Shown in pieces: positions 6,505 through 55,826 of a DNA stretch of 64,000 nucleotides (the first letter of the stretch is position 1; each line of letters opens with the position of its first letter). A model generated the notes under the pieces. The model ran no database searches. It was given only the letters and a program-made list of their open reading frames with translations, and was not told where the DNA came from. A program made the position numbers and the translations under genes. The stretch comes from Squalus acanthias (taxonomy: Eukaryota), in the NCBI GenBank assembly GCA_030390025.1, contig CM059430.1, forward strand, positions 72,850,001 to 72,914,000, given 5' to 3'.

Positions 6505-6510
6505 TGCCCT

Positions 6511-11192: not shown

Positions 11193-11496
11193 CTCCTGTT
11201 TGAAATAAATCGGAAGTCAGTTGCCGTTTGGACGGTGAGATGAAATGCTTGGCAGGTATAAATAGTCCCGCTCTTGACAGGCTGCGACTCTTCCAAAAAG
11301 CTGGAAACTTCATACAGACCTTTTTCATTTATCTGTATAAAGGCGTTTATCCCGTTCTCAACTTTCACACCATCCTTGTAAAAAGTAAAATTGATATCAT
11401 TTGGGTAAAATTCAGCAGTTTTACACACAAGAATCAGAGAAGCAGATGCATTACGATCAGCCTCATTGCAGTCAATACTTAGTGGGGTTGGGGGAA
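11193..11496 (-). pseudogene. Copy A exon: C1-set domain, 5-nt deletion before the donor
   Basis: Paralog of 48111-48419; 304 nt versus 309 nt; the conserved Trp is replaced (TFYKDG versus TWYKDG); the donor falls in phase 2. Confidence 0.88.
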
Positions 11497-12870
11497 CTGT
11501 GGAACAAGATACAGAAGAGATTAGAACTGACTGAGCTCTTTCAGAATGTATGAATTAATTAAATGTTTTACCATATCAAAGCCAATATGACATTAATAAT
11601 TTCCAAACATTAAATGGCATGTTTATTTATAGAAACGTTGGGTGGATTTTCAACTTTCTGTCTGGGCGGGAAACAGACGATGTTGATCGGCAACTCGGCA
11701 TCAAGTTGAAAATCTATTCCATTAATTAAAGCATTACAATTTGTACTGAGACATTGGTGAGCTAAACATGATACCGTCGAGATCAATGCTAGAAAGAATA
11801 TAGATGGAAGATATAAAGGTTTGGAGGTTTTTGAGATTATTGGAGCACATATATATCTCAATATAACTCATAATTAAGAGTAGGTAGAAGGGGATTCGAT
11901 GTATAATATGGTTTACAACACATCGCATTTTACAGGGCTAAGCTTTTAATTGAAAAAAGAGATCATTTCACGATCAAATTGTTTTTATGTTGTTTATAAA
12001 TTCATATTGAACACCATTCACCTAACCAGGAATATTTTATAAAGTTGACAGACGGTTTAATAACTGTCGAGACAGTTTTACTGAGTTAGCAACTCTTTCG
12101 AAGTAATTATTGTCAAGAGTGTTGGAAAGGTTAATGCAAAATGCAGATAACACGTAGTTTAAGAACGACAGTAAGTGAAGAACCATAGCTGGAGGAAACG
12201 CAAAGCAGAAGACAATAGATCAGTGAGAAAGTTACTGAGAACTCGCCGGAGAGTGACCCTAAGTTTAAACCAGCGTGCTTCAGAGAGAGATGTAACGGTT
12301 CGAAACCAACAATTAACTTGACATCTAAGGGAAGAGCTTATTCGTCATATTCTCATTCAAGCGGCAGATTTAGCAATGAAAGTCAAACTTTCGTCCTCGC
12401 TAAAATAAACTGTACTCAATTATAACCAGCAAATTATGTTACATTGTGATCGTGAATGATGTTCATTGTTTTTTTGATTTTGCTCGTCTACGCTAAATAT
12501 TAAGAATGCATTCGTAATGATATTAATGCATCATCAATGTTGAACCTCTTGCTCACCACTAGCTGCAATTTAGTGGATGTAATTAAGTAAATTAATCAGT
12601 GGCAAACCACTTTCACGTTCAATTCTTGGTCGCGTTCTTAATCAAGTGTTTAAATGTGTCTTTACCAAAGGTGTTCGTTCCCAAACGTTAATTGAACCGA
12701 ATTGTGTATAAATAAAGCAAGGTATTGAATAAGAATTTCATTGTAAACTCCAACAGGCTTAAAACAAACGCTTGGATGCCCCAAACATAAATCAGGATAA
12801 AAACATCTTGCATCTTGTTTGTTTTGTTTGCTTTAAAAATATTGGTGGAATAGTTTCAGGTACAAATTAC

Positions 12871-13183
12871 CGTAGATGACAAGTTTTGACCCAGTTCCAT
12901 TTCCCATCCGACTACGTGGATGTTTAACTCCGCAGTAATAAACTCCGGAGTCCGAGGCGCTGACATTGAGGAACTGAAGAATGGCCTTCTCCTTTCTTCA
13001 AAGGAAGAAATCGTTTACAGCTGTCATTAGCTGACTGTAGAAACTCTATTTCTCCCATTTTCCACCAGTAAACAGTCACATCGGAATTATCTAGGAAAAG
13101 AGGCAACGCGCAATAGAAAATAATGTTTCCACCTGCGATCACGTTGGCGTTTTCAGGGGCTTGGAACACTCTGATAACAGCAT
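12871..13183 (-). pseudogene. Copy A exon: V-set domain with J-like strand, +1 frameshift
   Basis: tttcag|AT GCT ... ATC TAC G|gtaatt; 313 nt, with an extra base at ~12987. Corrected read: VFQAPE..IFYC..VYWWK..AILQFLNVSASDSGVYYCGVKHPRSRMGNGTGSKLVIY. Confidence 0.88.
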
Positions 13184-16100
13184 CTGAAACAGCTGTGAGG
13201 AAATAAATGCAAACAATAATTAGATATATCGCTCACACACGTCTTGCTGACAATAGACATCGACTTCTGAGAGTAGGGTATATTTGCTGAGGATTAAATT
13301 CAATCATTGTCAAAGATATCGGATATTACAAGAGCTGTCCATAACGAGTTCATTTTAAACGACGAGATCTGTCGGCGCTGCTGTGTATTTAATGTGCCTT
13401 GCTACCACATTTCTATTAAAACTAAACTGATGTGAAGCGCAGACCACACCAGTACATTTTGAATTGCACATGTCTTCACGAACAGAAAATGATCAGATAT
13501 TGAACACATCAACTGAGATATGGTTGATGCGACGCAGGGACTAAGATCTTGAGATAACTCACGCCGAAAGGACTTTCACTGGACTGTGTTTCGTGTTTTA
13601 TGTTCAATTGACGTGGTAATACATCCTAACACCAGATTAACTTTGACAATATTCTCGTGGCACTGGCCATGGACCTTTCATCAACCATGCAATATAATCC
13701 GCATGTTTTCTCTTGCTCAACATCCTTGCGCAAAGGACCCGGCATCATTCAAAGATCCAGTTGCCCCTATCCAAGTGCAGCACACTACAATCGTCTATAT
13801 TAAACTATATCTACCAGATTTGGTTAATTCCTCTATTTAATCCAGTTTTGTCTGCAATCTTATTTTATTGTTTGCACGGTCTTTATATCCGCAGATATGT
13901 TCGTGCATTCTACGCACATGCAGATAACATCCCCATGCATTTACCCAAATAATTGATAAATAATGCAATGGTCCTAACGATTAATAACTGTCTTGTGTGT
14001 CCTTGAATAGAGCAGTTTCCTTGTCCGACACAACCAAAAACCTGCATGCAAATCCCACAATACTCAATCTACCTTAGTAGCCTTTTGTGCAGGACTGTAT
14101 TAACCTCTTTTTTAAAAGTCTAGATATACAATATCAATATGACTGCCTCATCTACCAACTTTGTAAATTATTGGGAAAAAGTGCAACGAAGTTTCTGAGA
14201 CACGACATTCTATTTCATAAACCTTGTCTGGATTCCCTAATAAACTCATCCTTTCGAATTGATAGTACAGCGCATCTCTAATAATTGTAAAGTTTCGAGT
14301 TTGTCATTTCGACCATTTTTGAAATTTTGGGAAATCGTGGCCCCCTCACGGGTCCATGGGCAGCATCACAGATATCTATACAATATAACTACTAAATTTA
14401 TACACAAATGGCTGATATAGCACAGGCCACATTTACTGGAACACTATTGGGAGAATGGAGTCAAGGTCAGCACCCCGATCTATTTGACGAGTAAAAACTG
14501 CAGCAAGGACTACATCCGTATCCAGTTCAACAGGTTTATTTTTTAACATCAGCCTCATGTCGTCGTATTGGTAACCCAGCAATTTGAATGTAGTGAAGGA
14601 AGTTGCAAAGTAAGCTTTTAAATCTTTTGCAATATCCTGGCACTCCACCTGAAGCTGCCCAGAGGACCGTTCAGTGGTCTAGCACTTTCCTTGGTGAGCC
14701 TGTGATGTTCAACATAGTTGAAAAATAGCACCCGATGCAATCTTCTCCATCCGTGTCTTTCTCGCTAATCATACAGATCCTTACATTTATACTAATGCTT
14801 GAAACATTGGGCTTGAATCAAATTAGACCTCTGAGCGAAAAAGTGACCAACAATATCCAGAAGTAACTCCAACACATACCATATACAACATAGTTCAGGT
14901 TTCCAGCGTCTGCTGTATCTTGCTTTTGACATATTAAAACATGATATGAATAGAAAGGAAAACTCATGGATATACCTGTATAAGCAGTTGCAAAGATCAA
15001 TATCCAGTGACACACAATCATATTTAGAAATGAAATTGACTGTAGGCTACAGGTAGGCGCCATCCTCTGCTGGTTTGGAAATACTGGCTTACTCCGAACA
15101 TGATTCCAACTGAGAGATGATGACGCATGAGTCTAAAACTGCCGTCAGTAACGGAATTTATTTTAAGAGTTAAGATCTGTGCCCGCGGTTGTGCGTTCAT
15201 GATGGACTATAACTTGAACACATTATTTAATATGAATTGCTGTAGTAGCAGTAAATATATCTTTAAAGAATTAGATCAAACCTTTGGAGAAATTATTTAG
15301 CTCGACATCTGCAGTTGTTGAGAAAGTTTATGGACTCCAACAAAGTCAACACAACTGGCCGATTTCACAAAGCGCCATACGCACTCTTGTACATGCACAT
15401 AACTTTAAGTCAAAATGATACCAAACCACCATCACTGCAGCGGACGGCGGCCGCAAACTTGCACCTCCATTACAATACACATAAGAAGCGCAACTTATAC
15501 TGCCGGCTCTGCCTGGCATTGCGTACAATGAACGTAGACGTTTGTGTTTGGCACTTTCCATTTGCCTGTTCAACAGCTGAACATATAATTTGAGCGTCAT
15601 GTCTCACTCATTTAACAATAATTCAGACAATATGCTTCATAAAACAGCCGTTGATCAAATTCAGCGAGCAGACCAGAAACACCAATGTAAGAAAGATAAT
15701 AATATACAGAACGAGTTTGGACTATTCAGATATTTTATGAGGACGGTCCAGTGCACAGCGAAAGAATAAGCATGAAGGTGGCTAGAATTAACCTGCTGTT
15801 CAACTGAAACCATCAATCTGTTTTTGCATATATATTGAGGCATTCTTTAGAATAATTCCAGCTAATAACCATAAGTGTGTCTAGATATTATAGTCCCGAA
15901 AATTAAACCTAATACGCGAGAGTACGCACTGTCTACTCTCGCGTATTAGATCCCAAATTGCCGGTTTCCTGCATGCACTGCGCATGCGCGAGAAACCGGC
16001 ACTTCTTGAATTGCAAAGGGGGCGGTTTCTAAGTGAACCGCGTGCGCGCTGCATGCTGTGCGCACGCAGTGTACTTAGTTTTTTTTCAGCTTTGAACGCG

Positions 16101-29215: not shown

Positions 29216-29334
29216 TGGTAGCTGAGGAGGAAGCCGAGAAATACATTATAAATGGTAGGACACCTCGACGTGCAGAAGATCAGAGGGACCTTGGAGTGCA
29301 TGTCCACAGATCCTTGATGGTAGCAAGACAGGTA

Positions 29335-39444: not shown

Positions 39445-41058
39445 CCTTGGCAGCAAAATGGATTCACAGGTCTCTCCAGGCCGAGATTCAAGGCTGCAAT
39501 GAGCAGGGTGTGGCTGGGAAGCAAGATGCCCCCCCCCCCCTTTAAGCACTGGCCGGCGCCAGTGTGTCTGTGTTCCCTCGCTAACTGGCAGCACCTGCGC
39601 TGCGCTCGCGCGCTGAGTTAGCGCCTCACTGCTCGGCCTTTGCGCCTTAAGACAGGTGTGCAGCGCCTGATTTAGCGCTCCACTCACCTCCCAGGGCGGT
39701 AAAAGTGAAGTTTCCAGTCAGTGGCGATAATTAGCGCCAGGCACTAATTTTTGCGTCCAGACGATATTTGCGCCCCAAACGGGGCGCGACCTAATTTTCC
39801 CCCCCAAAACTTCCCATTGCGCTTCCCAGGAGCGTAATCAGACAACGAAATTGACTAGCGAACCAAAGAAGGAAACATTAGGAAAGGGGTCTAAAACCTT
39901 GATCAAAGAGGTAGGTTTACGGAGCATTTTAAAGGAGGAGAGAGAGGTAGAGAGGTGGAGAAGTTTCGGGAGAAAATTCTAGAGTTGTGAGATTATATCG
40001 CTGAGGGCTCGGCAGACCATGGTGGGGCGAATTAGGGGGTCCGAAAGAGGCCGGAATTGGAATAATGCAGCTTTCTGTGCGAATTGTAGGGCCGGAGAAT
40101 GTTGAAGAGATTAGCAGGGGCGTGGCTATGGAGCGATTTGAAACCAAAGATAAGAATTTTTAATTGTCGAACGAGGAAAGCAAAAGCGACCTCATTGTTT
40201 CACAGGAGACGACAATATTTGTATGGAAACCTCATAAGCATGAATGTGAATACTCCCAAAATAAAAACCTAGACATTAATATAAATGAGCCATCGCTTAT
40301 TTCTAATTCATTAAAAGCCATTTAATTAAATATTTAAAGCAAAAACTTATTTTTAGAAAAATACATTTAAAAGTTTTAAAAGGGCTAAAGTTTTTAAATG
40401 TATAAATTATTGATAAAATTTGATTTTTTCTGTTTTTTATATCTCTTACGCTATTAAAAGCAGGTCTTGTGCCTGCTTTTGCCAGGCGTAAGAATTTCAC
40501 AGGCAGTCGCTTGGTAGAAGTTGTGCAAATCACAGCCCATTTATGCACTTTTCCAGGGGATGTGGAGGATCTTGACAGATCGCAAGTTCCGGGTTTCAGC
40601 GCATGCCTAAACCCGGGACTTGCGCTGCCCCGACGGGTGCATACAAACCTGGTACACACCCTTAGGGGCCGCAAATTATATCACATTATGCTTCTGTGGA
40701 TTCCATTTACCTACGGAATCCCCATAAGCACAATAGGAATCACCTAAAAACAGACTTTCACAACACTTAAAAAAATCATCACTTGGTCAAAATTAATTAA
40801 AATACAATTTAATTGAACATTTAAAACAAATATTTAATTTTTTGAAAAATAAATGTAAAAAATTTTTAATGGGCCAAAAGTAACCTAAACAATTTTTAAT
40901 GGTATTTATTTGTTTAAATCATTTAAGAAGATGTATTTTAATATTTATTAAAACCGTTACGCTGGTAAAAGAAGGCCTTATGCCTGCTTTTACCTGGTAC
41001 CTGGCGTAAGTTTTTCATGGGCATTCGCTGGGCAGTAGTTGGGCAATTAGCGAATGTC

Positions 41059-42125
41059 CACATGGCTATCTCATAGAAGGCAGAGGGTGGTGGTGGATGG
41101 ACAATTTTCGGACTGGAGACCAGTTACCAGCGGTGTGCCACAGGGGTCGGTGCTTGGTCCTCTGCTGTTTGTGATTTTTATCAATGACTTGGAGGAGGGC
41201 ACTGAAGGGTGCATCAGTAAATTTGCTGATGACACCAAGATTGGTGGAGTAGTGGATGAGGTGGAGGGCTGTTGTAGGCTGCAAAGAGACATTGATAGGA
41301 TGCAGAGCTGGGCAGAAAAATGGCAGATGGAATTTAACCCTGATAAGTGCGAGGTGATTCATTTTGGTCGGGCAAATTTGAATAAGGATTACAGGGTCAA
41401 CGGCAGGGTTCTGAGGAACGTGGAGGAACAGAGGGATCTGGGGGTTCATATCCATAGATCTCTGAAGGTTGCCACTCAAGTAGATAGAGCAGTAAAGAAG
41501 GCCTATAGTGTGTTAGCGTTTATTAAACAAGGGGTTTGAGTTTAAGAACAGTGAGGTTATGCTGCAACTGTACAGGACCTTGGTGAGACCACATTTGGAA
41601 TATTGTGTGCAGTTCTGGTCAACTCACTATAGGAAGGACGTGGAAGCATTGGAAAAAGTGCAAAGGAGATTTACCAAGAAGCTGCCTGGTTTGGGGGGGA
41701 GGTCTTATGAGGAAAGATTGAGGGAGCTAGGGCTTTTCTCTTTAGTGCGGAGGAGGATGAGAGGCGACTTAATAGAGGTTTATAAGATGATGAGGGGGAT
41801 AGATAGAGTGGATGTTCAGAGACTATTTCCTCGGGTGGATGTCGCTTTTACAAAGGGCATAACTATAAGGTGCATGGGGGGAGATATAGAAGGGATGTCC
41901 GAGGTAGATTCTTTACTCAGAGAGTGGTTGGGGTGTGGAATGGAATGCCTGCTGTGATAGTGGAGTCGGACACTTTAGGAACTTTCAAGCGCTTATTGGA
42001 TAAGCACATGGAGCACACCAGAATGATAGGGAGTGGAATAGATTGATCTTGGTTTCGGACAATGCTCGGCACAACATCGAGGGCCGAAGGGCCTGTACTG
42101 TGCTGTACTGTTCTCTCTCTGTTCT
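41059..42125 (+). mobile_element. 5'-truncated CR1 LINE inserted in a MITE
   Basis: [31 protein letters not shown]; MITE sequence resumes after the tail. Confidence 0.95.
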
Positions 42126-42360: not shown

Positions 42361-42505
42361 CTTCCCCAGCTCCGTTACGGATTATTTAGCTGAAGAGAAC
42401 TCATCTGCTCTGACTCTCGTCTGTAAAACGATAGAGTTCTGCCCGGAATCTCTCACCTTCACTTGGTATTAAGATCACACGAAGATTGTGACTGGGATCA
42501 GCAAA
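42361..42505 (+). pseudogene. Third, more divergent C1-exon relic of the same receptor family, opposite orientation
   Basis: ttttcaatag|CT TCC CCA GCT CCG TTA CGG ATT (SPAPLRI), then after a frameshift SSALTLVCKTIEFCPESLTFTWY*DHTKIVTGIS; truncated by a LINE fragment. Absent from the ORF track. Confidence 0.8.
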
Positions 42506-44350: not shown

Positions 44351-44513
44351 TTAGGTGATATTGGTTCTGGTGTAAATGAACTCGGCTATTGCTCTTTGGG
44401 TTTTCAAGTGTAACTGGTCACAATCTGAACTCTTATTCTGAAGTTTAGGCTGTTCTGTTTTCATGGAGCCAGCCAATTCCAGCGCAGCGTATGTCTGTTG
44501 CCGCTTGCTTTGT
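44351..44513 (-). CDS. Copy B terminal exon: cytoplasmic tyrosine-motif exon 2 (downstream of the premature stop)
   Basis: Encodes TYAALELAGSMKTEQPKLQNKSSDCDQLHLKTQRAIAEFIYTRTNIT*, similar to the previous exon (YAAL-x-L-x2-SMKT). The acceptor is ambiguous: tatag at 44514 is out of frame, caacag at ~44495 is in frame. Confidence 0.65.
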
Positions 44514-47500
44514 CTATAATGCGAGTGTTGGAGAATACCATTAGTACATGGTCAGTGCCAATATGTTCCGTAGTGATAGGAGCCATTACATTTAAGAAAG
44601 TCAACAGGTAATGCGATTTAACTAAGACGAGCAAACTAATTTATTTACTCTGCTGCCATGGGTGACCTGTATTTATTTTTTTCTCAACCTACCTGGGCCT
44701 ACAGAGTGCTCTCCTCTTGATACTTAGCCCTTGCAGTTTTCATTGACTTGGACAAATCTAATGCAGCGTAAATCTTCATCTCATTTGCTGATCCCTGCAT
44801 AGATCACAAAATAATGCATATTATATTGTTTACTCTTTATCTTAGTGACACTGCAGTGTATGGATTACACGTTGAACCGAACGGACTTTAATACTAAAAC
44901 TAGAGTTGGAAAGAGAAGCTTTAAAATAAATCCACTTTGAGATTTCTTTCTCTCAATAATTTTATACTATATCAAGAGGGCACTATATTATACGTTACTC
45001 TCTCAATGTGGACTATATTCGTGTTATAACTTATTGTTGTTACACAAGTTACTGCTTAGTAAGCCCTATGTGTGATAGCACAAAGGCCTAATGATACCTA
45101 AATTACTTGAGGTGTTCTGCTCTTACATGTGCATGCATGTTTGAAAATAACATTTTATGTTGTTGCTGATTATATTGGCATTATATATTTTGGATACAAT
45201 TTCAATTACATGTGAAAAAAACGCAGTAAAAACCTTCAGGAGATACATTGAATTTAGAATTGTCTCGCTGAAATATGAAATAAATATTTACTCTAAATTT
45301 TAAAGGTAAATGCTTTCCCTTAAGCAGCAAACTGATGTATTTCAGTCCAGCGGATTAATGGCATCTCTGAAAGTATTTCAAGCTTAATCTCACAGCCAAT
45401 TTCTATTTGCTTAACAAATGTATGAAAAGAACCTACCAGAACTTCTGGATGTGGTGGTTGTTCCATGGAATCCCCTGTTCCTGGTAATGAATGGACTTGA
45501 AAATTTGAACATGTATTATTTGCTAATATCGTTCTTCATGATTCCAAAACCATTTTATGTAGGCTTAATACAGTCCAAATTTATGTTCAGGAGCACATTC
45601 TAGAACTTGTTGGATATCTCTAATTGTTCAAGCTTTACTCTCAAATTACCTTCTCCAGATTTTGTTAATTTATTGAGTCCTACTCGAGTCAATTTCCACG
45701 GTGTCAAGAGGCTTCCTGCGTTGAGCATGGCCCTGAAATTGCGGATTCTGTGACGGCATCCTCTCAGAGTATACCATTGTATTCCTTTTGAAATGCCCCG
45801 TAAGTTCCGGATTTCCTCAAGTTCTTGCATATATCTGCAACGTGAGGACTGACAATGTACACGTTGACAGGCCATATGCGGGAAACCCGAAAAAGCAATC
45901 CCTGGCGCAGAGTTCAGCAATTTACACAGCGATTGGCCAGAAATTGCCCACGTGGGTCTTACAGTTCATGAAAGCAGGCATGGGATTGTTTGTATCAGCG
46001 TAAGGAGATATCTAAGGCTTAAATTAAAAAATTTTAACATCCAAAATTATGCACATATACTGTATTAAATGAGTTTATGCAAATATTAGACTGTATTACA
46101 GTTTTAAATACGTATGAAATTCTCAAAAAAAAATATATTGCCGAGGTTGGTGTAGTGAAGGTACTTTTGAATAAAATTCCAAATTTGAACATTGTATAAT
46201 TGTTAGATTTGGGAATTCCATTGCATATCATTGGGGGATACATTTCGTAAATGATTGGAATGGTATTCTGTTTATGGATTGGATGACTGAGCCCACGTGA
46301 TCGCAGATACGCTTCCGATGCGCCTGCATCATGGGATCTGTGGATCATTCCGCTGCCCTCCGCCTCGAGGCCTGAGACCACAACTTTTCACAGTCAGGGC
46401 ACCAGGAGATACTTTCGTAATTGTTTCATGGGTCGGAGGCATACTCCGGAATTATGCTTCTGACGGCAGTTTCTAGCCTGTTACTTTATGGGAAAGCGCA
46501 CCGCATTAGACCCTGCACTCAACTCACTTCCACAATGGTAATGCATCAGCAGAAAGTGGTCAGAGAATTTTAGATACAACACGAGAAACTTTCTCCTACC
46601 CACTCCAGAGAGGTGAAAGGCAATACGGCCACTTTATTGCTCCGGGACAGATTGTTAAACTCAGTGCATAGGTTCTAGTGCTCCATCTCCCTGGGTCCTA
46701 TTATCAGCAGCACAACATGTCATCCATTTGCAAGAGAGAAGCAATAAATTCTCATTTATGTAGCGCGTTCTCGGACGTTAAGACATCCCAATGCGCTTGT
46801 CTAAAGAAACGTACTTTGGAAGTTTAAGCAATGTTGTAATGCAAGGAAAAGCGGCGGCTAATTGATCACAGATAGGTCGTGCATACAGTCATGCGATAAA
46901 TAAGCAATTAAATTGTTTTATCGATGTACATTGGGGATACATGTTTTGCAGGTCACCGACAGATCTTCCAGTCCTCCTTAAATAGTCCCAAGAGATCTAT
47001 TACATCCACTTCAGCGGGCAGACGGTGACTGGTTTTCAGTTTTCATCCGAAAGCTCTCCCTCAGTACGGCACTGGGTTGTCGGCCTAAATTATGTGCTTA
47101 AATCTCCGACCGCTGATTATCAGGTGAAAATGCTACTACAGATCCAAGGCTGACATTAACTTACTTCATCCCTACCCTCACATTATCAAGGAAATACTGA
47201 AGGACACAATGAAACGGGACAATATCATACCTATACATATTATTAATGGATATCGCTTCCTTATGATTATCAGGAGCAACAGAATTAAGATTGCACCTCC
47301 TGCGGATCGATAGAGCTTTATGTACCATTGTGCGTTGCCATCTCCTGTAAAATAAATGTTAAAAATAAAATTTGAAATTGAACATTTTGAGAAAGTTTTC
47401 TGCAGACCCAACTTTCAATGTCGCCTATCATTCTTTTGAACGTTTATTTCAATTTTAGGGAGTCCCGCAGCATAAAGAGACGGTTAAACATTTTATTGAT

Positions 47501-50109
47501 CTTCTCATTTTTCCTTTTCCATTTCAAGTCGTTATGATTACTTAACATCTAAAGAGAATTTTACTACTGTGTTTATAAAATGGAGCACGATTAATCCTCC
47601 AGCCCTGAGTAATACTCAAGACGATTATCCTTGGACTTTAGTTTTTAGACCACATGTTAACTCGGAATTAGATATGATAGTTGATTCCTAGATTAGTCAC
47701 CAGTGTTTGGTAAACAAGTTATGCTGTTTCGAGAATTCAACAGCTTCAGCTTTCCCTTTTACTGAAACCAGCATTTTAATTCCAGAATTGTTTAAACTGA
47801 AGTTAAATTCTCAAACTACCATGGCGTGATTATCAGTCCAGGCGTCTGGGTTACTATTTCCGTACAATAACAATTATATTACAATACCTCAGCTCTCTAA
47901 TAAAATATGTTCAGTACAAAGACCTATTCGCCAACAGACCTTGAATAATCTACTTATATTCATATTCTTGTTCCTATGAAGAGTGAAAACTCATCAATGC
48001 TCCTTTAAGTGATTGAGGACAAAGTTATGCAAATGCCAAATACGGTCCATAATCTTTGGTATCCGTCTTGGGTCAGATGTTCCTTGCATTTGTTATAATT
48101 AGATTTTTACCTACGGTACTGGTTGAAATGAATCGGAAGTCAGTTGCCGTTTGGCCGGTGAGATGAAATGCCTGGCAGGTATAAATAGTCCCGCTCTTGA
48201 CAGGCTGTGACTCTTCCAAAAAGCTGGAAACTTCATACGGACCTTTTTCATTTAGCTGTATAACGGCGTTTATCCCGGTCTCAACTTTCACACCATCCTT
48301 GTACCAAGTAATATTGATATAATTTGGGTAAAATTCAGCAGTTTTACACACAAGAATCAAAGAAGCAGATGCATTACGATCTGCCTCATTGCAGTCAATA
48401 CGCAGAGGGCTTGGGGGAACTGTGGAACAAGATATAGAAGAGATGAGAACTGACTGAGCTCTTTCAGAATGTATGAAGTAATTCTAATTTCTACCAGATT
48501 AAATCAATGTGACATTAATACTTTGCAAACATTAAGTGGCATGTTCATTTATAGAAACGTTGGGTGGATTTTCAACTTGCTGTCTGGGCGGGAAACAGAC
48601 GATGTTGATCGGCAACTCGGCATCAAGTTGAAAATCTATCCCATTAATTAAAGGATTACAATTTCTACTGAGACATTGGTGAGCTAAACATGATACCGTC
48701 GAGATCAATGCTAGAAAGAATATAGATGGAAGATATAAAGTTTTGGAGGGTTTTGAGATTATTGCAACATATATATCTCAATATAACTCATAATTAAGAG
48801 CAGGTAGAAAGGGATTCGATGGATAATATGGTTTACAACACTTTGCATTTTACAGGAATAAGCCTTTAATTTAAAAAAGAGATCATTTCACGGTCAAATT
48901 GTTTTAATGTTGTTTATAAAAGCATATTGAACACCATTCACCTAAACAGGAATACTTTAGAAAGTTGACAGACGGTTTAATAACTGTGGAGACAGTTTTA
49001 CTGAGTTGGAGACTCTTTTGAAGTAATTATTGTGAAGAGTGTTGGAAAGGTTAATTTAAAATATAGATAATACGTAGTTTAAGAACGGCAGTAAGTGAAG
49101 AACCATAGCTGGAGGAAACGCAAAGGAGAAAACAGATCAAATGGAAAGTTACTGAGAACTCGCCGTAGAAGGACCCGAAGTTTAAGCCAGATTGCTGCAG
49201 AGAGAGACGTAACGGTTCGAAACCAACAATTAACTTGCCATCTAACGGAACAGCCTATTCGTCATATTCTCATTGAAGCGGCAGACTTACCAGTGAAAAT
49301 CAAACAGTCGTCCTCGCTAAAATAAACTGTACTCAATTATAACCAGCAAATTATGTTACATCGTGATAATGAATGATGTTTATTGCCCTCTGCTTGTTGA
49401 TTTAGCTTGGCTTCGCTAATTATTAATAATGCATTCGTAATGATATTAATGCATCATCAATGTTGAACCTCAAGTTCACCACTAGCTGTAATTTAGTGGA
49501 TGGAATTAAGTAAATTAATCAGTGGCAAACCTCTTTCACGTTCAATTATTGATGGCGTTATTAATCAAGTGTTGAAATTTCTCTTTACCGAAAGTTATAT
49601 TACATTCGTGTTCGTTCCCAAACGTTATTTGAACGAATTGTGTATAAATAAAGCATGGTATTGAAAAAGAATTTCATTGTAAATTCCAAAAGGCTTAAAA
49701 CAAACGCTTGGATGTCCGAAACATGAATGACGATAAAAAAAATTCTTGCACTGTGTTTGTTTTAAACATTTAGTGGAATAGTTTCAGGTACAAACTACCG
49801 TAGATGAGAAGCTTTGACCCAGTTCCATTTCCCATTCGTCTACCCGGATGTTTCACTCCGCAGCAATAAACTCCGGAGTCCGCGGAGCTGACATTCAGGA
49901 GCTGAAGAGAGGCCTCTCCTTTCTTCAAAGGAAGAAATCGTTTTCTGCTGTCATTAAGTGAATGTAGAAACTCATTTTCTCCCAGTTTCCACCAGTAAAC
50001 AGTCATATCGGAATTATCTTGTAAAAAGGGAGCGCGCAATAGAAAGTAATGTTCCCACCTGCGATCTCGTTGGCGTTTTCAGGGGCTTGGATCACACTTA
50101 AATAAGCAC
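44351..50109 (-). CDS. Ig-superfamily V-C1-TM-cytoplasmic receptor gene, copy B (NKp30/SIRP-like, non-rearranging; leader exon not resolved)
   Basis: Six AG/GT-bounded, phase-compatible exons read by eye: V 50109-49799, C1 48419-48111, TM 47344-47231, cyt1 45495-45437, cyt2 44794-44693, cyt3 44513-44351. As written it has a -1 frameshift in the A5 run at 50023-50027 and a TAG at 44699-44701. Confidence 0.8.
44693..44794 (-). CDS. Copy B exon: cytoplasmic tyrosine-motif exon 1
   Basis: atgcag|GGA ... GCC CAG|gtagg; 102 nt, phase 0/0; GSANEMKIYAALDLSKSMKTARAKYQEESTL*AQ, with an in-frame TAG at 44699-44701. Confidence 0.75.
45437..45495 (-). CDS. Copy B exon: cytoplasmic linker
   Basis: ttttcaag|TC CAT ... 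GTT CTG|gtagg; 59 nt, phase 1 to 0; VHSLPGTGDSMEQPPHPEVL. It bridges the phases of the TM exon and the next exon. Confidence 0.65.
46740..47155 (-). mobile_element. Decayed SINE with an L2-like tail (DeuSINE-like)
   Basis: Tail resembles the L2 ends in this window; central ctccctcagtac..cactg core. Confidence 0.55.
47231..47344 (-). CDS. Copy B exon: transmembrane segment
   Basis: ttttacag|GA GAT ... TGT ATA G|gtatga; 114 nt, phase 1/1. GDGNAQWYIKLYRSAGGAILILLLLIIIRKRYPLIICI is a hydrophobic stretch followed by an RKR stop-transfer. Confidence 0.82.
48111..48419 (-). CDS. Copy B exon: C1-set Ig domain
   Basis: acag|TT CCC ... ACC GTA G|gtaaaa; 309 nt, open. LVCKTAEFYPNYINITWYKDG ... YEVSSFL ... 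YTCQAFH matches the C1 hallmarks (L-x-C-x4-FYP, I-x-I-T-W, Y-x-C-x-x-x-H). Confidence 0.92.
49799..50109 (-). CDS. Copy B exon: V-set Ig domain with in-exon J-like G strand
   Basis: tttag|GT GCT ... ATC TAC G|gtagtt (phase 1/1). Reads VIQAPE..NITFYC..VYWWK..ASLQLLNVSSADSGVYCCGVKHPGRRMGNGTGSKLLIY, with B-strand Cys, C-strand Trp, DSGVYxC and GxGxxL. It is 311 nt, one short of 312. Confidence 0.9.
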
Positions 50110-53100
50110 CTAAACAGCTGTGAGGAAATAAATGCAAACGATAATGAGATATATCGCACACACTCGGCTTGCTGACAATAATCATCGACTTCTGATAGTA
50201 GGTTATAATTGCTGAGGTTTAAATTCAATCTTTGTGAACGATATCTGAGCCTACAAGCGCTGTCTATAACGAATTCATTTTAAACGACGAGATCTGTCGG
50301 CGCTGCTGTGTATTTAATGTGCCTTGCTACCACATTTCTATTCTTAAAACTAACCTGATGTGAATCGCAGACCACACCAGTACATTTTGAATTGCACATG
50401 TCTTCAGGAACAGACAATGAACAGACAATGAACACATCAACTGAGATATGGTTGAAGCGACGCAGGGCCTAAGATCTTGACATAACTCACGACGAAAGGT
50501 CTTTCACTGGACTGTGTTTCTTGTTTTAAGTTCAATTGACGTGGTAATACATCCTAACACCTGATTCAATTTGACAATATTCTCGTGGCACTGACCATGG
50601 ACATTTCATCATACATGCAATGTAATCCTCCTGTCTTTCTCTAGATCAACATCCTTGAGCAAAGGACCCGGCATCAGTCAAAGATGCAGTTGCTCCTATC
50701 CAAGTGCAGCACACTACATTCGTCTATATTAAATTATATCTACCAGATTCGTTTAATTCCTGTATTTAATCCAGTTTTGTCGGCAATCTTATTTTATTTC
50801 ATCCACGGTCTTTATATCCGCAGATATGATCGTGCAATCTACGCACTTGCAGATAACATCCCCATGCCTTTACCCAAATAATTGATAAATAATGCAATGG
50901 TACTAAAGATTAATAACTATCTTCTGTGCCCCTGAATAGAACAGATTCCTTAACAACCCAAACCAAATCCTGCATGCAAATCCCACAATACTCAGCCTAC
51001 CTTATCAGCCTTTTGTGCGGAACTGTATTAACCACTTTTTTAAAAGTCTAGATGTACAATATCAATATGACTGCCTCATCTACCAACTTTGTAATATCTT
51101 GGGAAAAAGTAAAACGACATTGGTGAGACACGACCTTCCATTTCATAAACCATGTCTGGATTCCCGATTAAACTCATCCATTCGAATTGATAGTACAGCG
51201 CATCTCGAATAACTGTATAATTTCGAGTTTCTCACTTAGACCATTTTTGAAATTTTGGGAAGTCGTGGCCCCCTCAGTGGTCCATGGACAGCATCATAGA
51301 TAACTATACAATATAACTACTAAATTTATACACAAACATCTGACATAGCACAGGACACATTTATTGGAACACACTCGGTAGAATGTCTTTCAGGTCAGCA
51401 CCCCGACTTTCTTTCCGAGCACTAACTGCAGCAAGAACTGCATCTCAATCCAGTTCAAAAGGTTTAGTTTTAATATCAGCCTCATGTCGTCGTATTGGTA
51501 AACCAACATCTTTGAATGTAGTGAAGGCAGGTGCAAAGTAAGCTTTTAAAACTTTTGCCATGTCCTGGGATTCCGCCTGAAGCTGCCCAGAGGATCGTTC
51601 AATGGTCAAGTACTTTCCTTGGTGAGCCTGTTATGTTCAACATAGTTAAAAAATACCTTGCTGTTAATACCACACCGATACAATCTTCTCCATCCATGTC
51701 TTTATCTCTAATCATACAGAATCTAACATTTATCCTAATGCTTGAACCTTGGGGCTTGTATAACATTGGACCAGTGAGCGAAAAAGTGACCAAAAACAAC
51801 CAGAAATAACACCAACACATACCATATGCAACAGAGTTCAGATTTCCAGCGTCTGCTGTATCTTGCTTTTGACATATCAAAACATGATATTAATAGAAAG
51901 GAAAACTCAAGGATATACCTGTATAAGCAATCGCGAAGATCAATATCCAGGGAAGCACAATCATATTTAGAAATGGAATTGACTGCAGGCTACAGGTAGG
52001 CGCCATCCTCTGTTGGTTTGGAAATACTGGCTTACTCCGAACATGATTCGAACTGAGAGATGATGACGCATGAGTCTAAAACTGCTGTCAGTAATGGAAA
52101 TTATTTTAGGAGTTAAGATATGTGCGCGCGGTTGTGCGTTCATGATTGACTGTAACTTGATCACACTATTTAATCTGAAATCCTGTAGTAGCAGTAAATA
52201 TATCTTTAAAGAATTAGATCAAACTTTTGGAGGAATTATTTAGCTCGACATCTGCAGTTGTTGAGAAAGTTTATGGACTCCAACAAAGTCAACACGACTG
52301 GCCGATTTCACACAGCGCCATACGCACTCTTGTACATGCACATAACTTTAAGCCAATATGATAGCAAACCACCATCACTACAGCGGACGGCGGCCCCAGA
52401 CTTGCACCTCCATTTCAATAAACATAAGAAGCGCAACTTATACTGCCGGCTCTCCCTGGCATTGAGTACAATGAACGTAGACATTTGTGAGTTTGTGTTT
52501 GGCGTTTTCCATCTGCCAGTTAACAGCTGAAGATATAATTTGAGCGTTATGTCTCACTCATTTAACCATAGTAGAGAATATACTTCATAAAACAGCCGTT
52601 GATCAAATTCAGCGAGCAGACCAGAAACACCAATGTAAGAAAGATAATAATATACAGAACGATTTTTGACTATTCAGACATTTTGTGTGGACGTTCCAGT
52701 GGACACTGAAAGAATAAGTATGAAGGTGGGTAGAATTAATCTGCTGTTCAACTGAAACCTGCTATCTGTTTTTGCAGATATATTGAGGCATTGTTCAGAA
52801 TAATTCCTGCTAATAACCATAAGTGTGTCAAGATATTATTACGTTGCAATCAAAAGGCGCATGTTTAGTGTTAGAACTGCCTACACGGAAATGTACTAAT
52901 AAACCATTTCCGTTTTTTACCCCGAGACAGCAATCCGTTTATGATGTAATCTATCAAATAGAGCAGAAACCGCATTTCTGGTGAGGCCGAAAAGGTCATC
53001 TGCTCTTTGATCAAGGTATGAACGGCCAGTGTTCTAAGCGCATTTTAAGAGGATACGTGCGAGTAGAAACCATAGTTTAACCTTGTGACTCTTGCTGATG

Positions 53101-53772: not shown

Positions 53773-55826
53773 TATACAATCATAGAATCATAGAGCATTT
53801 ATCGAATTCCCATTTGAAAGCAACCATTGGATCTGCTTCCATCACCCTACTGCATTCCAGATCATAACAAATCATAGAATTACATAGAATTACAGCGCAG
53901 AAACAGGCCTTTCGGCCCAACCAGTCCATGCTGGCATTTATGCTGCCCTTGAGACTCCGCTCATCCTTCCTCATCTAAATATTTCAACATAACCCTCTAT
54001 TCCCTTCTCCCTCATATGCTTATGTAGCTTTCCTTTAAATTCATCCTTACAATTCGCCTCAACGACTACCTGTTGTACCGAGTTCCACATTCTCAGCATT
54101 CTCTTGGTAAAGAAGCTTATTCTGAATTCCCTATTTGATTTCTTTCCGAAAGTTGCCTCGGCCCCAAGCTCTAGAATTCCCTGTCTAAACTTCTCTGCCT
54201 CTCTACCTCTCTTTACTCCTTTAAAATGCTCCTTAAAACATATCTGTTTGACAATCTTTTGGTCATCTGCCCTGATTTCTCTTTATGTGCCTCGTTGTCA
54301 ATTTGTTTTGTCTTATAATACTCCTGTGAAGCACCTTGGGACGTTTTAATACGTTAAAGGCGCTATAAAATAAAAGTTGTTGTTGTTGTTGAATATTTTA
54401 TATTGATGGCTTCTAGATTTGCTGGTCCCCACAAGATTAAACACTCTGTGTTTACTCTATCAAAACATTTGATAATTTTGAAGACTTTTATTAGGTCACC
54501 CCTCAGCCTTCTCTTTGCAAGAGAAAATAGACCCAGCATGTTCATCCTTTCCTTATTGGTATAACATCGCAGTTTTAGTGTCATTGTTGTAAATCCTTTT
54601 TGCAAGCTCTCCAGTATAACTATAGCCATTTTATAATATGGCAATCAGAATGGTACACAGTACTCCACGTGTGGTCTAACCAAGTTTCAGTACAAGTTGA
54701 GCATAACTTTTCTAATTTTCAATTCTATCCGTCTGGAAATAAAACCCCATGATTGTTTTTCTTTTTTATAGCCTTATTAACTTGAGTCACTAATATAAGT
54801 GATCTGTGTAATTGTACATCCAGATCCCTTTGCTGCTCTATCCCATTTAGATTATTATTTTCCAAGTAACATGTGACCACCTTATTTTTCTTACCAATAT
54901 GTAATAACCCACGCTTATCTATATTGAAATTCAGTTGCCAATTGAATGCCCATTCTGCAAGTTTATTAATGTTTTCTTGTAATTTCTTGCAGTCCTCCTC
55001 AGTATTGAGTCTCCCCGCCCAATTGGGTGTCATCCACAAATGTAAAAATTGTGTTTTAATTCAAAAGTCTAAATTGTTAATATAAATTGTGAACAACAGT
55101 GGTCCCAGTATAGATCCTTGTGTGACCTCACTTCCCACCTTCTGCCAATCTGATTAACTACCCTTCACTTTAACTATCTGCTTTCTGTCTAGCAACCAGC
55201 TAGCTAGCCATTCTTCTACTTCTTCCCTGAATCTGCAGGCTGTGACCTTATTGATTAGTCTATTATGTGGTACCTTATCGAAGGTCTTTTGGAAATCTAG
55301 ATATATTACATTACTACATTTCCCTTATCTACACTCTCTATTACCTCTTCAAAAATTCAATGTGATTGGTTAGGCAAAGCTTTCACTTTTGAAATCCATG
55401 CTAAATATTCGTTATTATATTTTTGGTTTCTAGATGTTTTTCTATTGTTTCCTTCAGTAGGGATTCGATTACCTTCTCCCACAACCGATGTATAGCAGAT
55501 GCATATATTGTACCCTAGACATTTTCTATCTCCCTTCTTAAATATATGTTTAACTTTAGCTATCTGCCAGTCCTCTGGCATTACAACTTTTTTCTGACAA
55601 ATTAACAAATATGTGTATTGATGGCTCTGCTATCTCGCAACTTAAATTCTTTTGGAATTAAGTGATGTAATGCCTCCTGACCAGAGGTTTTATCCTCTTT
55701 GATTTTGATCAATTTACTGAATATTTTTCCCTTTCTATTTTAAATGTGGTTATAGCTTTTCTAATCTCATCATCCGATGTCATTTCCACCTGATCCGTCT
55801 TCCTGATAAATAGTGAAGCAAAATAA
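53773..55826 (-). mobile_element. Old CR1 LINE with a nested L2 tail; largely deleted in unit A (remnant 18093-18355)
   Basis: Degenerate RT motifs in ORFs 54363, 54725 and 55357; (atcataga)n tail. Confidence 0.88.
54145..54390 (+). mobile_element. L2 3' fragment
   Basis: ctcctgtgaagcaccttgggacgttttaatacgttaaaggcgctata..(gtt)n tail. Confidence 0.75.

What the first reader, a model, noticed from the sequence alone, without database searches (positions are those of the whole stretch)
44351..50109. Non-rearranging, antigen-receptor-like VJ-C1 membrane receptor
Seen: one exon encodes a whole V domain including a J-like strand (GNGTGSKLLI). It is followed by a C1-set exon, a TM exon and a tyrosine-motif tail, and no RSS-like heptamer/nonamer was noticed next to either V exon. 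Known: V+C1 is the TCR/Ig light-chain architecture, and germline-joined V(J) or V-C1 layouts occur in NKp30/NCR3, SIRP, NITR and tapasin/B7-H6. Inference: this is a member of a little-characterised multigene immune receptor family resembling the proposed pre-RAG antigen-receptor ancestor. The ORF track shows only fragments of it.
Basis: partly seen in the sequence, partly recalled or inferred. Interest (0 to 1): 0.85.

Follow-up and report, generated by a model that had tools for sequence, protein, structure and literature searches.

The report
Degenerate shark SIRP-like V-C1 receptor gene
This is a shark gene for a cell-surface immune receptor shaped like one chain of an antibody or T-cell receptor but made without gene rearrangement; it belongs to a large, unstudied family related to the mammalian inhibitory receptor SIRP-alpha, and this particular copy looks damaged.

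Summary
The exons are real. The minus strand carries a split leader (51964-51919), a germline-joined V(J) exon (50109-49799), a C1-set exon (48419-48111), a TM exon (47344-47231) and tail exons (45480-45437, 44794-44693, relic 44515-44351). Pfam calls V-set and C1-set, and no RSS is present.

As assembled, the V exon is 311 nt, with a 1-nt frameshift in a T5 run. All 3 short-read contigs covering that run, from two samples, have T6. The tail ends at a TAG that replaces the second of four conserved tyrosines, and a later tyrosine is also lost. A second copy 37 kb away is a clear pseudogene.

The gene belongs to a multigene family seen in 11 cartilaginous-fish species. NCBI auto-names its members 'SIRP-alpha-like', 'tapasin-related-like' or 'Ig lambda-like'. 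The closest intact relative is Heptranchias XP_067853494.1, about 70% identical. Its model folds like an antibody light chain, and its four-tyrosine tail is collinear with reptile SIRP-alpha tails (z 7-9).

Verdict: a degenerate copy of a SIRP-like inhibitory receptor family with one C1 domain. No RNA evidence was found. First-stage notes list similar VJ-C1-TM genes on other pieces of this genome. I found no paper on the shark family.

The parts
51919..51964 (-). Leader exon 1 of copy 1 (split leader): ATG, MIVLPWILIFAIAYT, donor ACAG|gtatat, phase 1
   Evidence: Read. It aligns to the leader of Heptranchias P0003 (tblastn E 2e-5). Borders were checked.
49799..50109 (-). Germline-joined V(J) exon of copy 1, 311 nt. 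Acceptor tttag|GT, donor TACG|gt. The G strand reads NGTGSKLLI, which has the G-x-G-x-x-L-x-V spacing of a J segment.
   Evidence: V-set 27.1 bits on the 80-aa part; 68% identity to P0003 over 82 aa.
50023..50027 (-). T5 run where the V reading frame breaks. Copy 2 and the homologues read through here.
   Evidence: In one search table 4, an extra base at this run is present in 1 of 1 covering contigs of X1 and 2 of 2 of X5.
48111..48419 (-). C1-set exon of copy 1, 309 nt, phase 1 at both ends, open frame. It contains FYP..ITWYKDG..YTCQAFH.
   Evidence: C1-set 44.4 bits, E 2.1e-11; 70% identity to P0003; inside the family clade, 99 SH-aLRT.
47231..47344 (-). Connecting-peptide and transmembrane exon, reading ...WYIKLYRSAGGAILILLLLIIIRKRYPLIICI
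   Evidence: It corresponds to helix 237-264 of the P0003 model.
45437..45480 (-). Cytoplasmic exon 1 (GTGDSMEQPPHPEVL). It enters in phase 1 and leaves in phase 0.
   Evidence: aligns to P0003 272-285; z 7.8 against the P0003 tail.
44693..44794 (-). Cytoplasmic exon 2, GSANEMKIYAALDLSKSMKTARAKYQEESTL, then TAG (44701-44699), then GCCCAG|gtaggt. The stop replaces the Tyr of the homologues' TVYAQ motif and lies 6 nt before the donor.
   Evidence: (z 18.6 against the P0003 tail).
44351..44515 (-). Relic distal tail after the stop, reading ..QTYAALELAGSMKTEQPKLQNKSSDCDQLHLKTQRAIAEFIYTRTNIT*. The homologues' SVYAQL motif has become SDCDQL, and the exon does not fit the phase of the previous donor.
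   Evidence: z 17.7 against the P0003 tail.
11193..15021 (-). Copy 2, a pseudogene: leader 15021-14976; V exon 13183-12871 (313 nt, +1 frameshift at GGAGAAGG); C1 exon 11496-11193 (304 nt, 5-nt deletion at its 3' end, invariant Trp changed to Phe). It has no TM or tail exons.
   Evidence: homology with copy 1 ends at 10666 <-> 47572; C1-set 41.8 bits.
42365..42502 (+). Inverted fragment of a C1 exon from another family member, with an in-frame stop (..FTWY*DH..)

Best explanation
The locus is one copy of a multigene family of cartilaginous fish that encodes type I membrane receptors. Family members have a split leader, one germline-joined V(J) domain, one C1-set domain, a transmembrane helix, and a tail with four to five tyrosine motifs.

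Shown: the exon structure, the domain types, the lack of an RSS, family membership, and the light-chain-like V-C1 fold of the close homologue.

Inferred: the family is kin of SIRP-alpha and works the same way. Under this reading the V domain binds a cell-surface ligand, tail tyrosines are phosphorylated and recruit SHP-1/SHP-2 type phosphatases, and the cell is inhibited. Short-tailed relatives with a charged residue in the membrane span would be the activating partners.

This particular copy is degenerate. In the assembly the V exon is frameshifted. The tail is cut by a nonsense codon at the second conserved tyrosine, leaving only one non-canonical YxxL motif. The fourth tyrosine is lost. The copy has changed as fast as its dead neighbour. 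It is most likely a pseudogene, or at best a variant that binds but hardly signals.

My odds: family assignment about 0.9; kinship with SIRP about 0.65; this copy non-functional or signalling-impaired about 0.6.
For: Pfam gives V-set 27.1 bits and C1-set 44.4 bits; for the homologue P0003 it gives V-set 40.5 and C1-set 47.2.

Family evidence:
- The exhaustive search with the C1 exon gave 506 hits at E<=1e-3 and 149 at E<=1e-10.
- Ten of ten V-C1-type hits that I looked up are chondrichthyan predicted proteins.
- All 46 hits of the P0003 search, P0003 included, are chondrichthyan; 45 carry a species name and one, P0043, does not.
- In the IQ-TREE C1 tree, the 36 family domains plus the window form one group (99 SH-aLRT). 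The window's nearest relatives are P0003 (Heptranchias), P0170 (Pristis), and P0162 and P0008 (rays), at 97 SH-aLRT.

SIRP link:
- BLASTP of P0003 against green-turtle SIRP-alpha aligns C1, TM and the whole tail with four collinear Tyr motifs (E 4e-10).
- Tail-only local alignments to three reptile SIRP-alpha tails score z 8.2, 9.4 and 7.1, with 0 of 1000 shuffles as high in each.
- In the family-profile search of the PDB, SIRP-alpha ranks 3rd (116.8 bits) and SIRP-gamma 5th.
- The nearest named ESM Atlas clusters are SIRP-alpha (0.96).

Fold: the AF2 model of P0003 has confident V and C1 domains and a G-strand break at the GxG. The 48 Foldseek PDB chains listed (ranks 1-50, similar chains of one entry left out) are all antibody light chains, with E about 1e-14.

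Degeneracy:
- The V exon is 311 nt.
- TAG stands at the Tyr position and a later Tyr is replaced by Cys.
- Derived replacements number 16 in copy 1 and 15 in pseudogene copy 2. In copy 1 they include Leu to Pro in the conserved GLYE motif.
- dN/dS between the copies is 1.0 for V and 0.41 for C1. Neither differs clearly from neutral (p 0.57 and 0.06).

The SIRP mechanism and the SIRP-beta/DAP12 pairing were taken from passages of PMC12975943.
Against: - The C1 tree does not join the family to SIRP d2 or d3; the backbone is a polytomy.
- The window's C1 exon alone hits the IgA1 heavy chain and UrIg2 best in the PDB, and SIRP is not among the 60 rows shown.
- The tail similarity could be convergence of ITIM-type motifs. 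My shuffles destroy the motifs, and I had no unrelated ITIM tails as a control. The window's own tail exons are not significantly like SIRP-alpha when taken one at a time (z <= 3.5).
- The frameshift may be an assembly slip or private to one haplotype. All 3 contigs over the run in two samples have the in-frame T6. The same contigs also differ from the window at 49958, however, so they may come from alleles or paralogues.
- All splice sites and the start codon are intact.
- The stop lies 6 nt before the last donor. By the usual 50-55 nt rule (recalled, not tested), a transcript would escape nonsense-mediated decay.
- C1 dN/dS of 0.41 leans towards some constraint.
- No RNA data bear on the question either way.
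Confidence: 0.7

Rival explanations
1. The same gene, but functional. The T5 run would be an assembly error or a rare allele, and the TAG would be the normal stop of a short-tailed family variant with one YxxL motif. Such a variant could be a weak inhibitor, a decoy or an adhesion-type receptor, like SIRP-gamma among the SIRPs.
For: All 3 of 3 contigs over the run, in two samples, carry T6. The start codon and all splice sites are intact. C1 dN/dS is 0.41. Natural short-tailed members exist in the family, such as P0008 and P0171. The stop is only 6 nt before the last donor.
Against: The contigs may be paralogues or other alleles: 216 of 362 laid contigs in X1 are only 95-99% alike, and none matches the window at 49958. 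Copy 1 has as many derived replacements as the dead copy 2 (16 against 15), including Leu to Pro in the conserved GLYE motif. The remaining motif, MKIYAAL, lacks the usual I/V/L/S residue at position -2. No RNA contig was laid.
Confidence: 0.35
2. The family is a separate antigen-receptor-like lineage, akin to UrIg/UrIg2 or to a pre-RAG V(J)-C1 chain. Under this reading it is not SIRP kin, and the SIRP-like tail is convergent.
For: The family profile's best PDB hit is UrIg2 (133.3 bits). The window's C1 exon hits UrIg2 second. The Foldseek top matches are all light chains. The nearest Atlas cluster for the V part alone is 'putative antigen receptor' (0.95). The C1 tree keeps the family apart from SIRP d2 and d3. 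The gene has the split leader and single-exon VJ described for UrIg and UrIg2 (PMC12227049, section 7 read).
Against: UrIg2's higher score sums three C domains. The C1 tree does not join the family to the C1-array or IgH group either. UrIg and UrIg2 have 3 to 11 C domains, and the paper describes no tyrosine-motif tail (0 occurrences of ITIM). The 90-residue collinear tail match to SIRP-alpha has no counterpart in UrIg2.
Confidence: 0.2
3. It is a germline-joined immunoglobulin light-chain gene, or another true antigen-receptor gene.
For: The architecture is V(J)+C1, and light chains are the best structural matches. One family member is auto-named 'Ig lambda-1 light chain-like'. Germline-joined light-chain genes exist in sharks (recalled).
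Against: The gene has TM and cytoplasmic exons with tyrosine motifs. Identity to light chains is only 19-26%. No RSS is present. The family C1 domains form their own clade.
Confidence: 0.02
4. It is an NKp30 (NCR3) orthologue.
For: It has a single-exon VJ domain with a GNGT motif. NCR3 is the other known non-rearranging VJ gene of sharks (PMC12227049 section 7; PMC10751288 passages).
Against: NKp30 has no C1 domain (recalled). No NKp30 chain appears among the 60 best PDB rows. The tail and TM are of a different type.
Confidence: 0.02

Closest known systems
SIRP family (SIRP-alpha / PTPNS1, SIRP-beta, SIRP-gamma)
   Same: It has an N-terminal V domain with a J-like G strand, followed by C1-set domain(s) and a TM helix. 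In the intact homologue, four tyrosine motifs occur in the same order and with similar spacing as in reptile SIRP-alpha. Short-tailed relatives carry a charged residue in the membrane span, which recalls SIRP-beta (sequences; SIRP features from PMC12975943 passages). NCBI's automatic name is 'SIRP-alpha-like'.
   Different: It has one C1 domain instead of two; only the skate member P0012 has two, nearly identical. It is a large, clustered, fast-diverging multigene family. The C1 domain does not group with SIRP d2 or d3. The ligand is unknown. In this window copy, two of the four tyrosines are gone.
UrIg and UrIg2 (non-rearranging shark antigen-receptor-like genes)
   Same: The VJ domain is encoded by a single exon, the leader is split, the C domains are of C1 type, and the genes are found in cartilaginous fish (PMC12227049 abstract and section 7). 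UrIg2 is the top PDB hit of the family profile.
   Different: UrIg2 has 9-11 C domains and UrIg several. The paper describes no tyrosine-motif tail. Those are single genes linked to the MHC or the antigen-receptor complex, not a multigene array. The C1 tree gives no specific grouping with the C1-array proteins.
Immunoglobulin light chains / TCR chains
   Same: The ectodomain has V+C1 chain architecture and a G-strand GxG bulge. The 48 Foldseek PDB chains listed (ranks 1-50, similar chains of one entry left out) are all light chains.
   Different: There is no RSS and no separate J segment. Identity is 19-26%. The gene has a membrane anchor and a signalling tail of its own.
NKp30 (NCR3), NITR, PRARP
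   Same: They are non-rearranging receptors with a joined VJ domain (listed together with SIRP in passages of PMC11599192).
   Different: NKp30 has a V domain only. NITRs are bony-fish genes with a V domain and an I-type domain or none. PRARP is V-C2-TM. These architectures are recalled from memory, and the primary papers were not held.

Membership tests
Chondrichthyan 'SIRP-alpha-like' V-C1 receptor family (unnamed; NCBI predicted proteins) | C1 domain falls inside the family clade | tested here: met
   the 36 family domains plus the window form one group (99 SH-aLRT). Nearest is P0003 at 73% identity. Searches agree.
Chondrichthyan 'SIRP-alpha-like' V-C1 receptor family (unnamed; NCBI predicted proteins) | Exon order leader - V(J) - C1 - TM - short cytoplasmic exons, collinear with an intact member | tested here: met
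   tblastn of P0003 finds every part in order on the minus strand. Splice borders were checked.
Chondrichthyan 'SIRP-alpha-like' V-C1 receptor family (unnamed; NCBI predicted proteins) | Intact reading frame | tested here: not met
   The V exon is 311 nt as assembled. TAG stands at the second conserved Tyr. Reads leave the frameshift open.
SIRP family | V-set domain with a J-like G strand | tested here: met
   (V-set). NGTGSKLLI has the G-x-G-x-x-L-x-V spacing. G122, G124, L127 and V129 are nearly invariant in alignment A3. The model shows a strand break at the GxG.
SIRP family | [quoted passage not shown] | tested here: not met
   There is only one C1 exon between the V and TM exons. The feature is taken from PMC12975943 passages.
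SIRP family | Cytoplasmic tail with four tyrosines (ITIM-type) that recruit SHP-1/SHP-2 | tested here: inconclusive
   The homologue P0003 has a collinear four-Tyr tail (z 7.1-9.4). The window copy keeps the first motif, has TAG at the second and Cys at the fourth. Phosphatase binding cannot be tested here.
SIRP family | Domains group with SIRP domains in a tree | tested here: inconclusive
   the family, SIRP d2, SIRP d3 and the IgH/C1-array groups are each separate, and the backbone is unresolved. No V tree was made.
SIRP family | Shared synteny with the SIRP gene cluster; binding of CD47 | not testable with these tools
The window holds only the two copies and transposon remains.
UrIg / UrIg2 | VJ exon followed by several (3 to 11) C1-type domains | tested here: not met
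   There is one C1 exon. The feature is taken from PMC12227049 section 7.
Rearranging antigen receptors (Ig, TCR) | V and J separated in the germline and flanked by RSS heptamer-spacer-nonamer | tested here: not met
   V and J lie in one exon. There is one lone intronic heptamer and no nonamer, with 0.22 heptamers expected by chance.
NKp30 (NCR3) | Single VJ domain without a C domain | tested here: not met
   A C1-set exon is present. The NKp30 architecture is recalled.

The most novel reading that the evidence does not exclude
The chondrichthyan V(J)-C1-TM family, with long inhibitory tails and short-tailed members bearing a charged membrane span, may be the so far missing polymorphic paired receptor system of cartilaginous fish. 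It would play the role that KIR, LILR, SIRP or NITR play elsewhere. Its single-C1 chain may preserve the ancestral layout from which both SIRPs and the rearranging antigen-receptor chains derive. The tandem, rapidly decaying copies in this window would then be birth-and-death turnover in such a system.
Probability: 0.15. Interest if true: 0.7.

Novelty: new member of a known kind. Interest (0 to 1): 0.38.

Why it matters
C1-set domains joined to a VJ-type V domain are rare outside Ig, TCR and MHC molecules, so each such gene in the oldest jawed vertebrates bears on how antigen receptors arose. UrIg and UrIg2 were reported on that ground (PMC12227049). Here the architecture is real, but the nearest kin appears to be SIRP-alpha.

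If that holds, the SIRP-type inhibitory receptor, including its four-tyrosine tail, dates back to the common ancestor of jawed vertebrates, and in cartilaginous fish it exists as a large, fast-turning-over gene family. That would give a concrete set of candidate paired immune receptors in sharks, where such receptors are hardly known.

The locus itself adds little. It is one probably dead or crippled copy next to a certainly dead one.

Tried and rejected
Approaches that led nowhere or were set aside:

- Expression. The look-up of sequencing runs listed no RNA holder, and the one RNA-guess run that I laid (X7) gave 0 contigs. Junctions are therefore unconfirmed.
- Frameshift check. Read laying showed T6 in all 3 covering contigs. 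All runs are Logan contigs, and many laid contigs are paralogue-like. None matches the window at 49958. In X1 the C1 exon is covered only by a contig of depth 58.7 with 6 differences. The reads therefore cannot say what the assembled haplotype carries.
- Reference phylogenies against TCR, IgL, NCR3, NITR, B7-H6 and tapasin. I made a C1 tree with the references I could fetch: 5 amniote SIRPs, a lungfish and a frog SIRP-like protein, IgH-type C domains of pig, trout and a cyprinid, and 4 shark or ray C1-array proteins. Its backbone was unresolved. I made no V tree.
- PDB sequence search with the 80-aa V piece. It gave only generic Ig hits such as titin, CEA and TIM-3.
- Rejected readings: light-chain gene, NKp30, and chance ORFs (see the rival explanations).
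- The contig joint 49141 -> 45727 is not a splice. 45727 is the edge of a dispersed repeat.
- Literature. Seven full-text searches found no description of this shark family. The library lacks most J Immunol and Dev Comp Immunol papers. Three papers were not held: PMC10530332 (UrIg 2023), PMC6761025 (Ohta 2019) and PMC6084782. Supplements were closed, and the supplementary gene tables of PMC10751288 and PMC12227049 might list these genes.
The searches used single exons by reference, or the natural homologue P0003.


Full report
WHAT IS THERE. The finding lies on the minus strand. Reading the sequence and laying the best intact homologue on it (tblastn of P0003) gives a seven-part gene, with borders checked:
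- a leader exon, 51964-51919 (ATG, MIVLPWILIFAIAYT, donor ACAG|gt, phase 1);
- a V(J) exon, 50109-49799;
- a C1 exon, 48419-48111 (309 nt, phase 1 at both ends);
- a connecting-peptide and TM exon, 47344-47231;
- a small cytoplasmic exon, 45480-45437;
- a second cytoplasmic exon, 44794-44693;
- a last stretch, 44515-44351, that ends in TAA.
All acceptors are AG and all donors GT.

DOMAIN TYPES. In Pfam the 80-aa in-frame part of the V exon scores V-set at 27.1 bits (E 5.1e-6, cutoff 26). The C1 exon scores C1-set at 44.4 bits (E 2.1e-11), while C2-set_2 gets 14.8 and I-set 14.9. The 37-aa first V piece and the TM exon match no family. The G strand reads N-G-T-G-S-K-L-L-I. In the 52-member family alignment A3, the positions G-x-G-x-x-L-x-V are nearly invariant, which is the spacing of the J motif. 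In the AlphaFold model of the homologue, the strand is broken exactly at the G-x-G. I scanned about 1.1 kb around each V exon on both strands. This found one lone CACAGTG in the intron 44 nt after the copy-1 V donor, no nonamer with one mismatch or fewer, and nothing at copy 2. About 0.22 heptamers are expected by chance. V and J are therefore joined in the germline, and nothing suggests rearrangement.

First, the V exon as assembled is 311 nt. The frame breaks in a T5 run (50027-50023): before it the frame gives ...ITFYCALPF, after it ...LQDNSDMTVYWWK.... Copy 2 and all homologues read through this point.

Second, the second cytoplasmic exon ends ...AKYQEESTL-TAG-GCCCAG|gt. The TAG (44701-44699) stands where the Heptranchias protein has the tyrosine of TVYAQ.

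Third, the stretch after it still resembles the homologue's distal tail (z 17.7). It does not fit the phase of the preceding donor, and its SVYAQL motif has become SDCDQL. What remains in frame is one motif, MKIYAAL, which lacks the usual I/V/L/S residue two places before the tyrosine.

THE FRAMESHIFT AND THE READS. No RNA run holds the stretch. I laid four runs: X1 and X5, two DNA samples of the same species label; X6, another species; and X7, guessed to be RNA. All are Logan contigs. At the T run an extra base is present in the single covering contig of X1 (depth 14.7 of 14.7) and in both covering contigs of X5 (59 of 59). That makes T6 and restores the frame, and no contig shows T5.

This does not settle the matter. 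In X1, 216 of 362 laid contigs are only 95-99% alike. No contig in any run matches the window at 49958. In X1 the C1 exon is covered only by a contig of depth 58.7 with six differences. The contigs may therefore be alleles or close paralogues. What they do show is that an in-frame version of this V exon exists in both animals. X7 laid nothing, so I have no transcript evidence at all.

A SECOND COPY AND THE NEIGHBOURHOOD. tblastn of the exons against the window found a second copy on the same strand. Its leader is at 15021-14976, its V exon at 13183-12871 and its C1 exon at 11496-11193. The two copies sit in a tandem duplication. Blocks 10666-15891 and 47572-52839 are 88.6% identical, and further blocks run to 23820 and 64000.

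Copy 2 is dead:
- Its V exon is 313 nt, with a +1 insertion at a different place.
- Its C1 exon has a 5-nt deletion at its 3' end and has lost the invariant Trp.
- Homology ends before the TM exon, and I found no TM-like stretch in the 3.3 kb downstream.

An inverted C1 fragment with an in-frame stop lies at 42365-42502. The rest of the window looks like LINE and other transposon ORFs (by eye only). A tblastn of all 206 stored proteins found no further family exons.

IS COPY 1 UNDER CONSTRAINT? Between the two copies, synonymous divergence (dS 0.128 in V and 0.129 in C1) equals the flank divergence, so there is no sign of gene conversion. dN/dS is 1.0 for V (28 non-synonymous and 8 synonymous changes) and 0.41 for C1 (12 and 8). 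Against neutrality these give p = 0.57 and 0.06. I polarised the replacements with ten family members as outgroup. Copy 1 carries 16 derived changes (12 in V, 4 in C1) and the dead copy 2 carries 15 (9 and 6), with 3 ambiguous. The derived changes in copy 1 include Leu to Pro in the GLYE motif, which 9 of 10 outgroups keep. The window's Pro variant seems real, because in X5 8.7 of 54.3 depth at 48239 agrees with the window. Copy 1 has thus changed as fast as a pseudogene, although diversifying selection on V could give the same V figure.

THE FAMILY. An exhaustive HMMER search of 1.84 billion representatives with the C1 exon gave 506 hits at E<=1e-3, 149 at E<=1e-10 and 5 at E<=1e-30. Many hits are proteins of 220-400 aa with the C1 domain at about residues 120-215, which corresponds to leader + V + C1 + TM + tail.

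I looked up names for 20 of the 150 listed hits. All ten V-C1-type hits are predicted proteins of cartilaginous fish: Heptranchias, Mobula, Callorhinchus, Mustelus, Amblyraja, Heterodontus and Hemitrygon. Of ten multi-domain hits, five are shark or ray C1-array proteins. The others are two teleost proteins, a trout Ig-like protein, a lungfish 'SIRP-gamma-like' protein, a pig Ig-like protein and a nematode unc-89.

A word-indexed search with the best homologue P0003 (XP_067853494.1, Heptranchias perlo, 377 aa) returned 46 proteins including P0003 itself. Forty-five carry a chondrichthyan species name, and the last (P0043) has an accession next to a Callorhinchus entry. The automatic names disagree: SIRP-alpha-like, SIRP-beta-like, tapasin-related-like, Ig lambda-1-like, NCR3 ligand 1-like, CD276 homolog, class II beta-like. 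In each of Heptranchias, Heterodontus and Callorhinchus, the hits for which a contig is recorded lie on a single large sequence. That search cannot see relatives without shared 5-mers, so I have not shown the family to be absent outside Chondrichthyes.

In a C1 tree (IQ-TREE quick, 82 rows, 103 columns), the 36 family domains and the window form one group (99 SH-aLRT). The window sits with Heptranchias, Pristis, Hemitrygon and Mobula members (97). This subfamily is therefore shared by sharks and rays. The window copies are about 70% identical to P0003.

WHAT IT IS KIN TO. Three lines point to SIRP.
- BLASTP of P0003 against green-turtle SIRP-alpha (P0210, fetched) gives as best match P0003 138-363 against SIRP-alpha 285-532. 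That span covers C1, TM and the whole tail, with YAxLN, xYAxxQT, NLTYAxL and SxYAxx in the same order (E 4e-10).
- Tail-only local alignments against three reptile SIRP-alpha tails score 75, 80 and 67, against shuffled means near 30 (z 8.2, 9.4, 7.1; 0 of 1000 shuffles each).
- A profile of the family ranks SIRP-alpha 3rd and SIRP-gamma 5th of 177,635 PDB sequences, and the nearest named ESM Atlas clusters are SIRP-alpha (0.96).

Several results count against a simple filing under SIRP.
- There is one C1 domain, not two.
- The tree leaves the family, SIRP d2, SIRP d3 and the Ig-heavy/C1-array group as separate branches of an unresolved backbone.
- The profile's top hit is UrIg2 and the second an IgA1 heavy chain, although both sum several C domains.
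- The window's C1 exon alone hits IgA1 H and UrIg2 best.
- The Atlas neighbour of the V part alone is 'putative antigen receptor'.
- The 48 Foldseek matches listed for the model (ranks 1-50, similar chains of one entry left out) are all antibody light chains, with E about 1e-14 and 19-26% identity.
- My shuffle control destroys the motifs, so convergence of ITIM-type tails is not excluded.

HOW IT MOST LIKELY WORKS. Shown: the architecture, the fold class of the homologue and the motif layout. Inferred by analogy with SIRP-alpha (passages of PMC12975943): the V domain binds a ligand on another cell, the tail tyrosines are phosphorylated and bind SHP-1/SHP-2, and the cell is held back. Some relatives have short tails and a charged residue in or at the membrane span. 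Examples are the Mobula protein P0008 with ...LLLIRIII..., and P0029 and P0171 with D or E. They look like activating or adaptor-dependent partners, as SIRP-beta is to SIRP-alpha. The family therefore has the look of a paired receptor system. For the window copy, the remaining tail has one non-canonical motif. Even if the protein is made, its inhibitory signalling is doubtful.

COMPARISON WITH THE LITERATURE. UrIg and UrIg2 are the described non-rearranging VJ-C1 genes of elasmobranchs. I read the abstract and section 7 of PMC12227049 and passages of PMC10751288. They share the single-exon VJ and the split leader with this gene, but they have 3 to 11 C domains and are single genes. The terms SIRP, ITIM and multigene do not occur in PMC12227049. 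A passage of PMC11599192 lists SIRP, NKp30, NITR, CD8, CD79 and PRARP as joined-VJ genes. Seven full-text searches found no paper on SIRP-like or VJ-C1-ITIM families in cartilaginous fish. Much of the relevant journal literature and all supplements were out of reach. The architectures of NKp30, NITR and PRARP, the nonsense-mediated decay distance rule and the ITIM consensus are recalled from memory.

EARLIER NOTES OF THE SCAN. First-stage notes told me that the genome is a shark's. They also report that another reader saw the tail module on this same stretch (s1-888486), that a further copy lies about 16 kb before the window (s1-889909), and that similar VJ-C1-TM genes were noted on other pieces of this genome (s1-888818, s1-889017). 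I checked only the first of these.

VERDICT. It is a new, probably crippled member of a known kind: a SIRP-like V-C1 inhibitory receptor family that is annotated but unstudied in cartilaginous fish.

Noticed in passing
window 11193-15021 (-): A second, tandem copy of the gene with leader, V and C1 exons only. It has a +1 frameshift in V, a 5-nt deletion at the end of C1, and the invariant Trp replaced by Phe. No TM or tail exons remain. It is a pseudogene.
   Followed up: yes
window 42365-42502 (+): An inverted fragment of a C1 exon of the same family, about 47% identical to P0003, with an in-frame stop in place of the residue after the conserved WY.
   Followed up: partly
window 51965-52084 (-): The 120 bases upstream of the start codon translate to a match (64% over 58 aa) with the N-terminal extension of a longer Heptranchias gene model (P0151). 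The 5' UTR or promoter-proximal region thus seems conserved between the two sharks.
   Followed up: no
window 45727 and 49141: Contigs in two samples join 49141 to 45727 with the same 36 other letters between them. Position 45727 is the edge of a dispersed repeat that also occurs at 18353-19086 and 55826-56584. This is probably the same element inserted in the V-C1 intron of a paralogue or allele.
   Followed up: partly
window 38647-39687 (-): A long ORF contains about five tandem copies of an 18-aa unit (..MAAYSKGYSPMGGTSGKT..). A direct DNA repeat lies at 38792-39067. It sits inside a GC-rich block (55% GC) that holds transposase-like ORFs.
   Followed up: no
window 4581-7902, 24354-33353, 41054-41957: Several LINE-type reverse-transcriptase ORFs lie in both orientations, partly nested, and fill much of the space between the two receptor copies. 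I identified them by eye from the translations only.
   Followed up: no
proteins P0008, P0029, P0171 (homologues, not in the window): Family members with short tails carry a charged residue (R, D or E) within or at the end of the membrane span. This suggests activating partners of the long-tailed inhibitory forms.
   Followed up: no
protein P0012 (Amblyraja radiata homologue): This skate member has two nearly identical C1 domains in tandem (V-C1-C1-TM-tail). A recent exon duplication has recreated the SIRP-alpha domain count.
   Followed up: no
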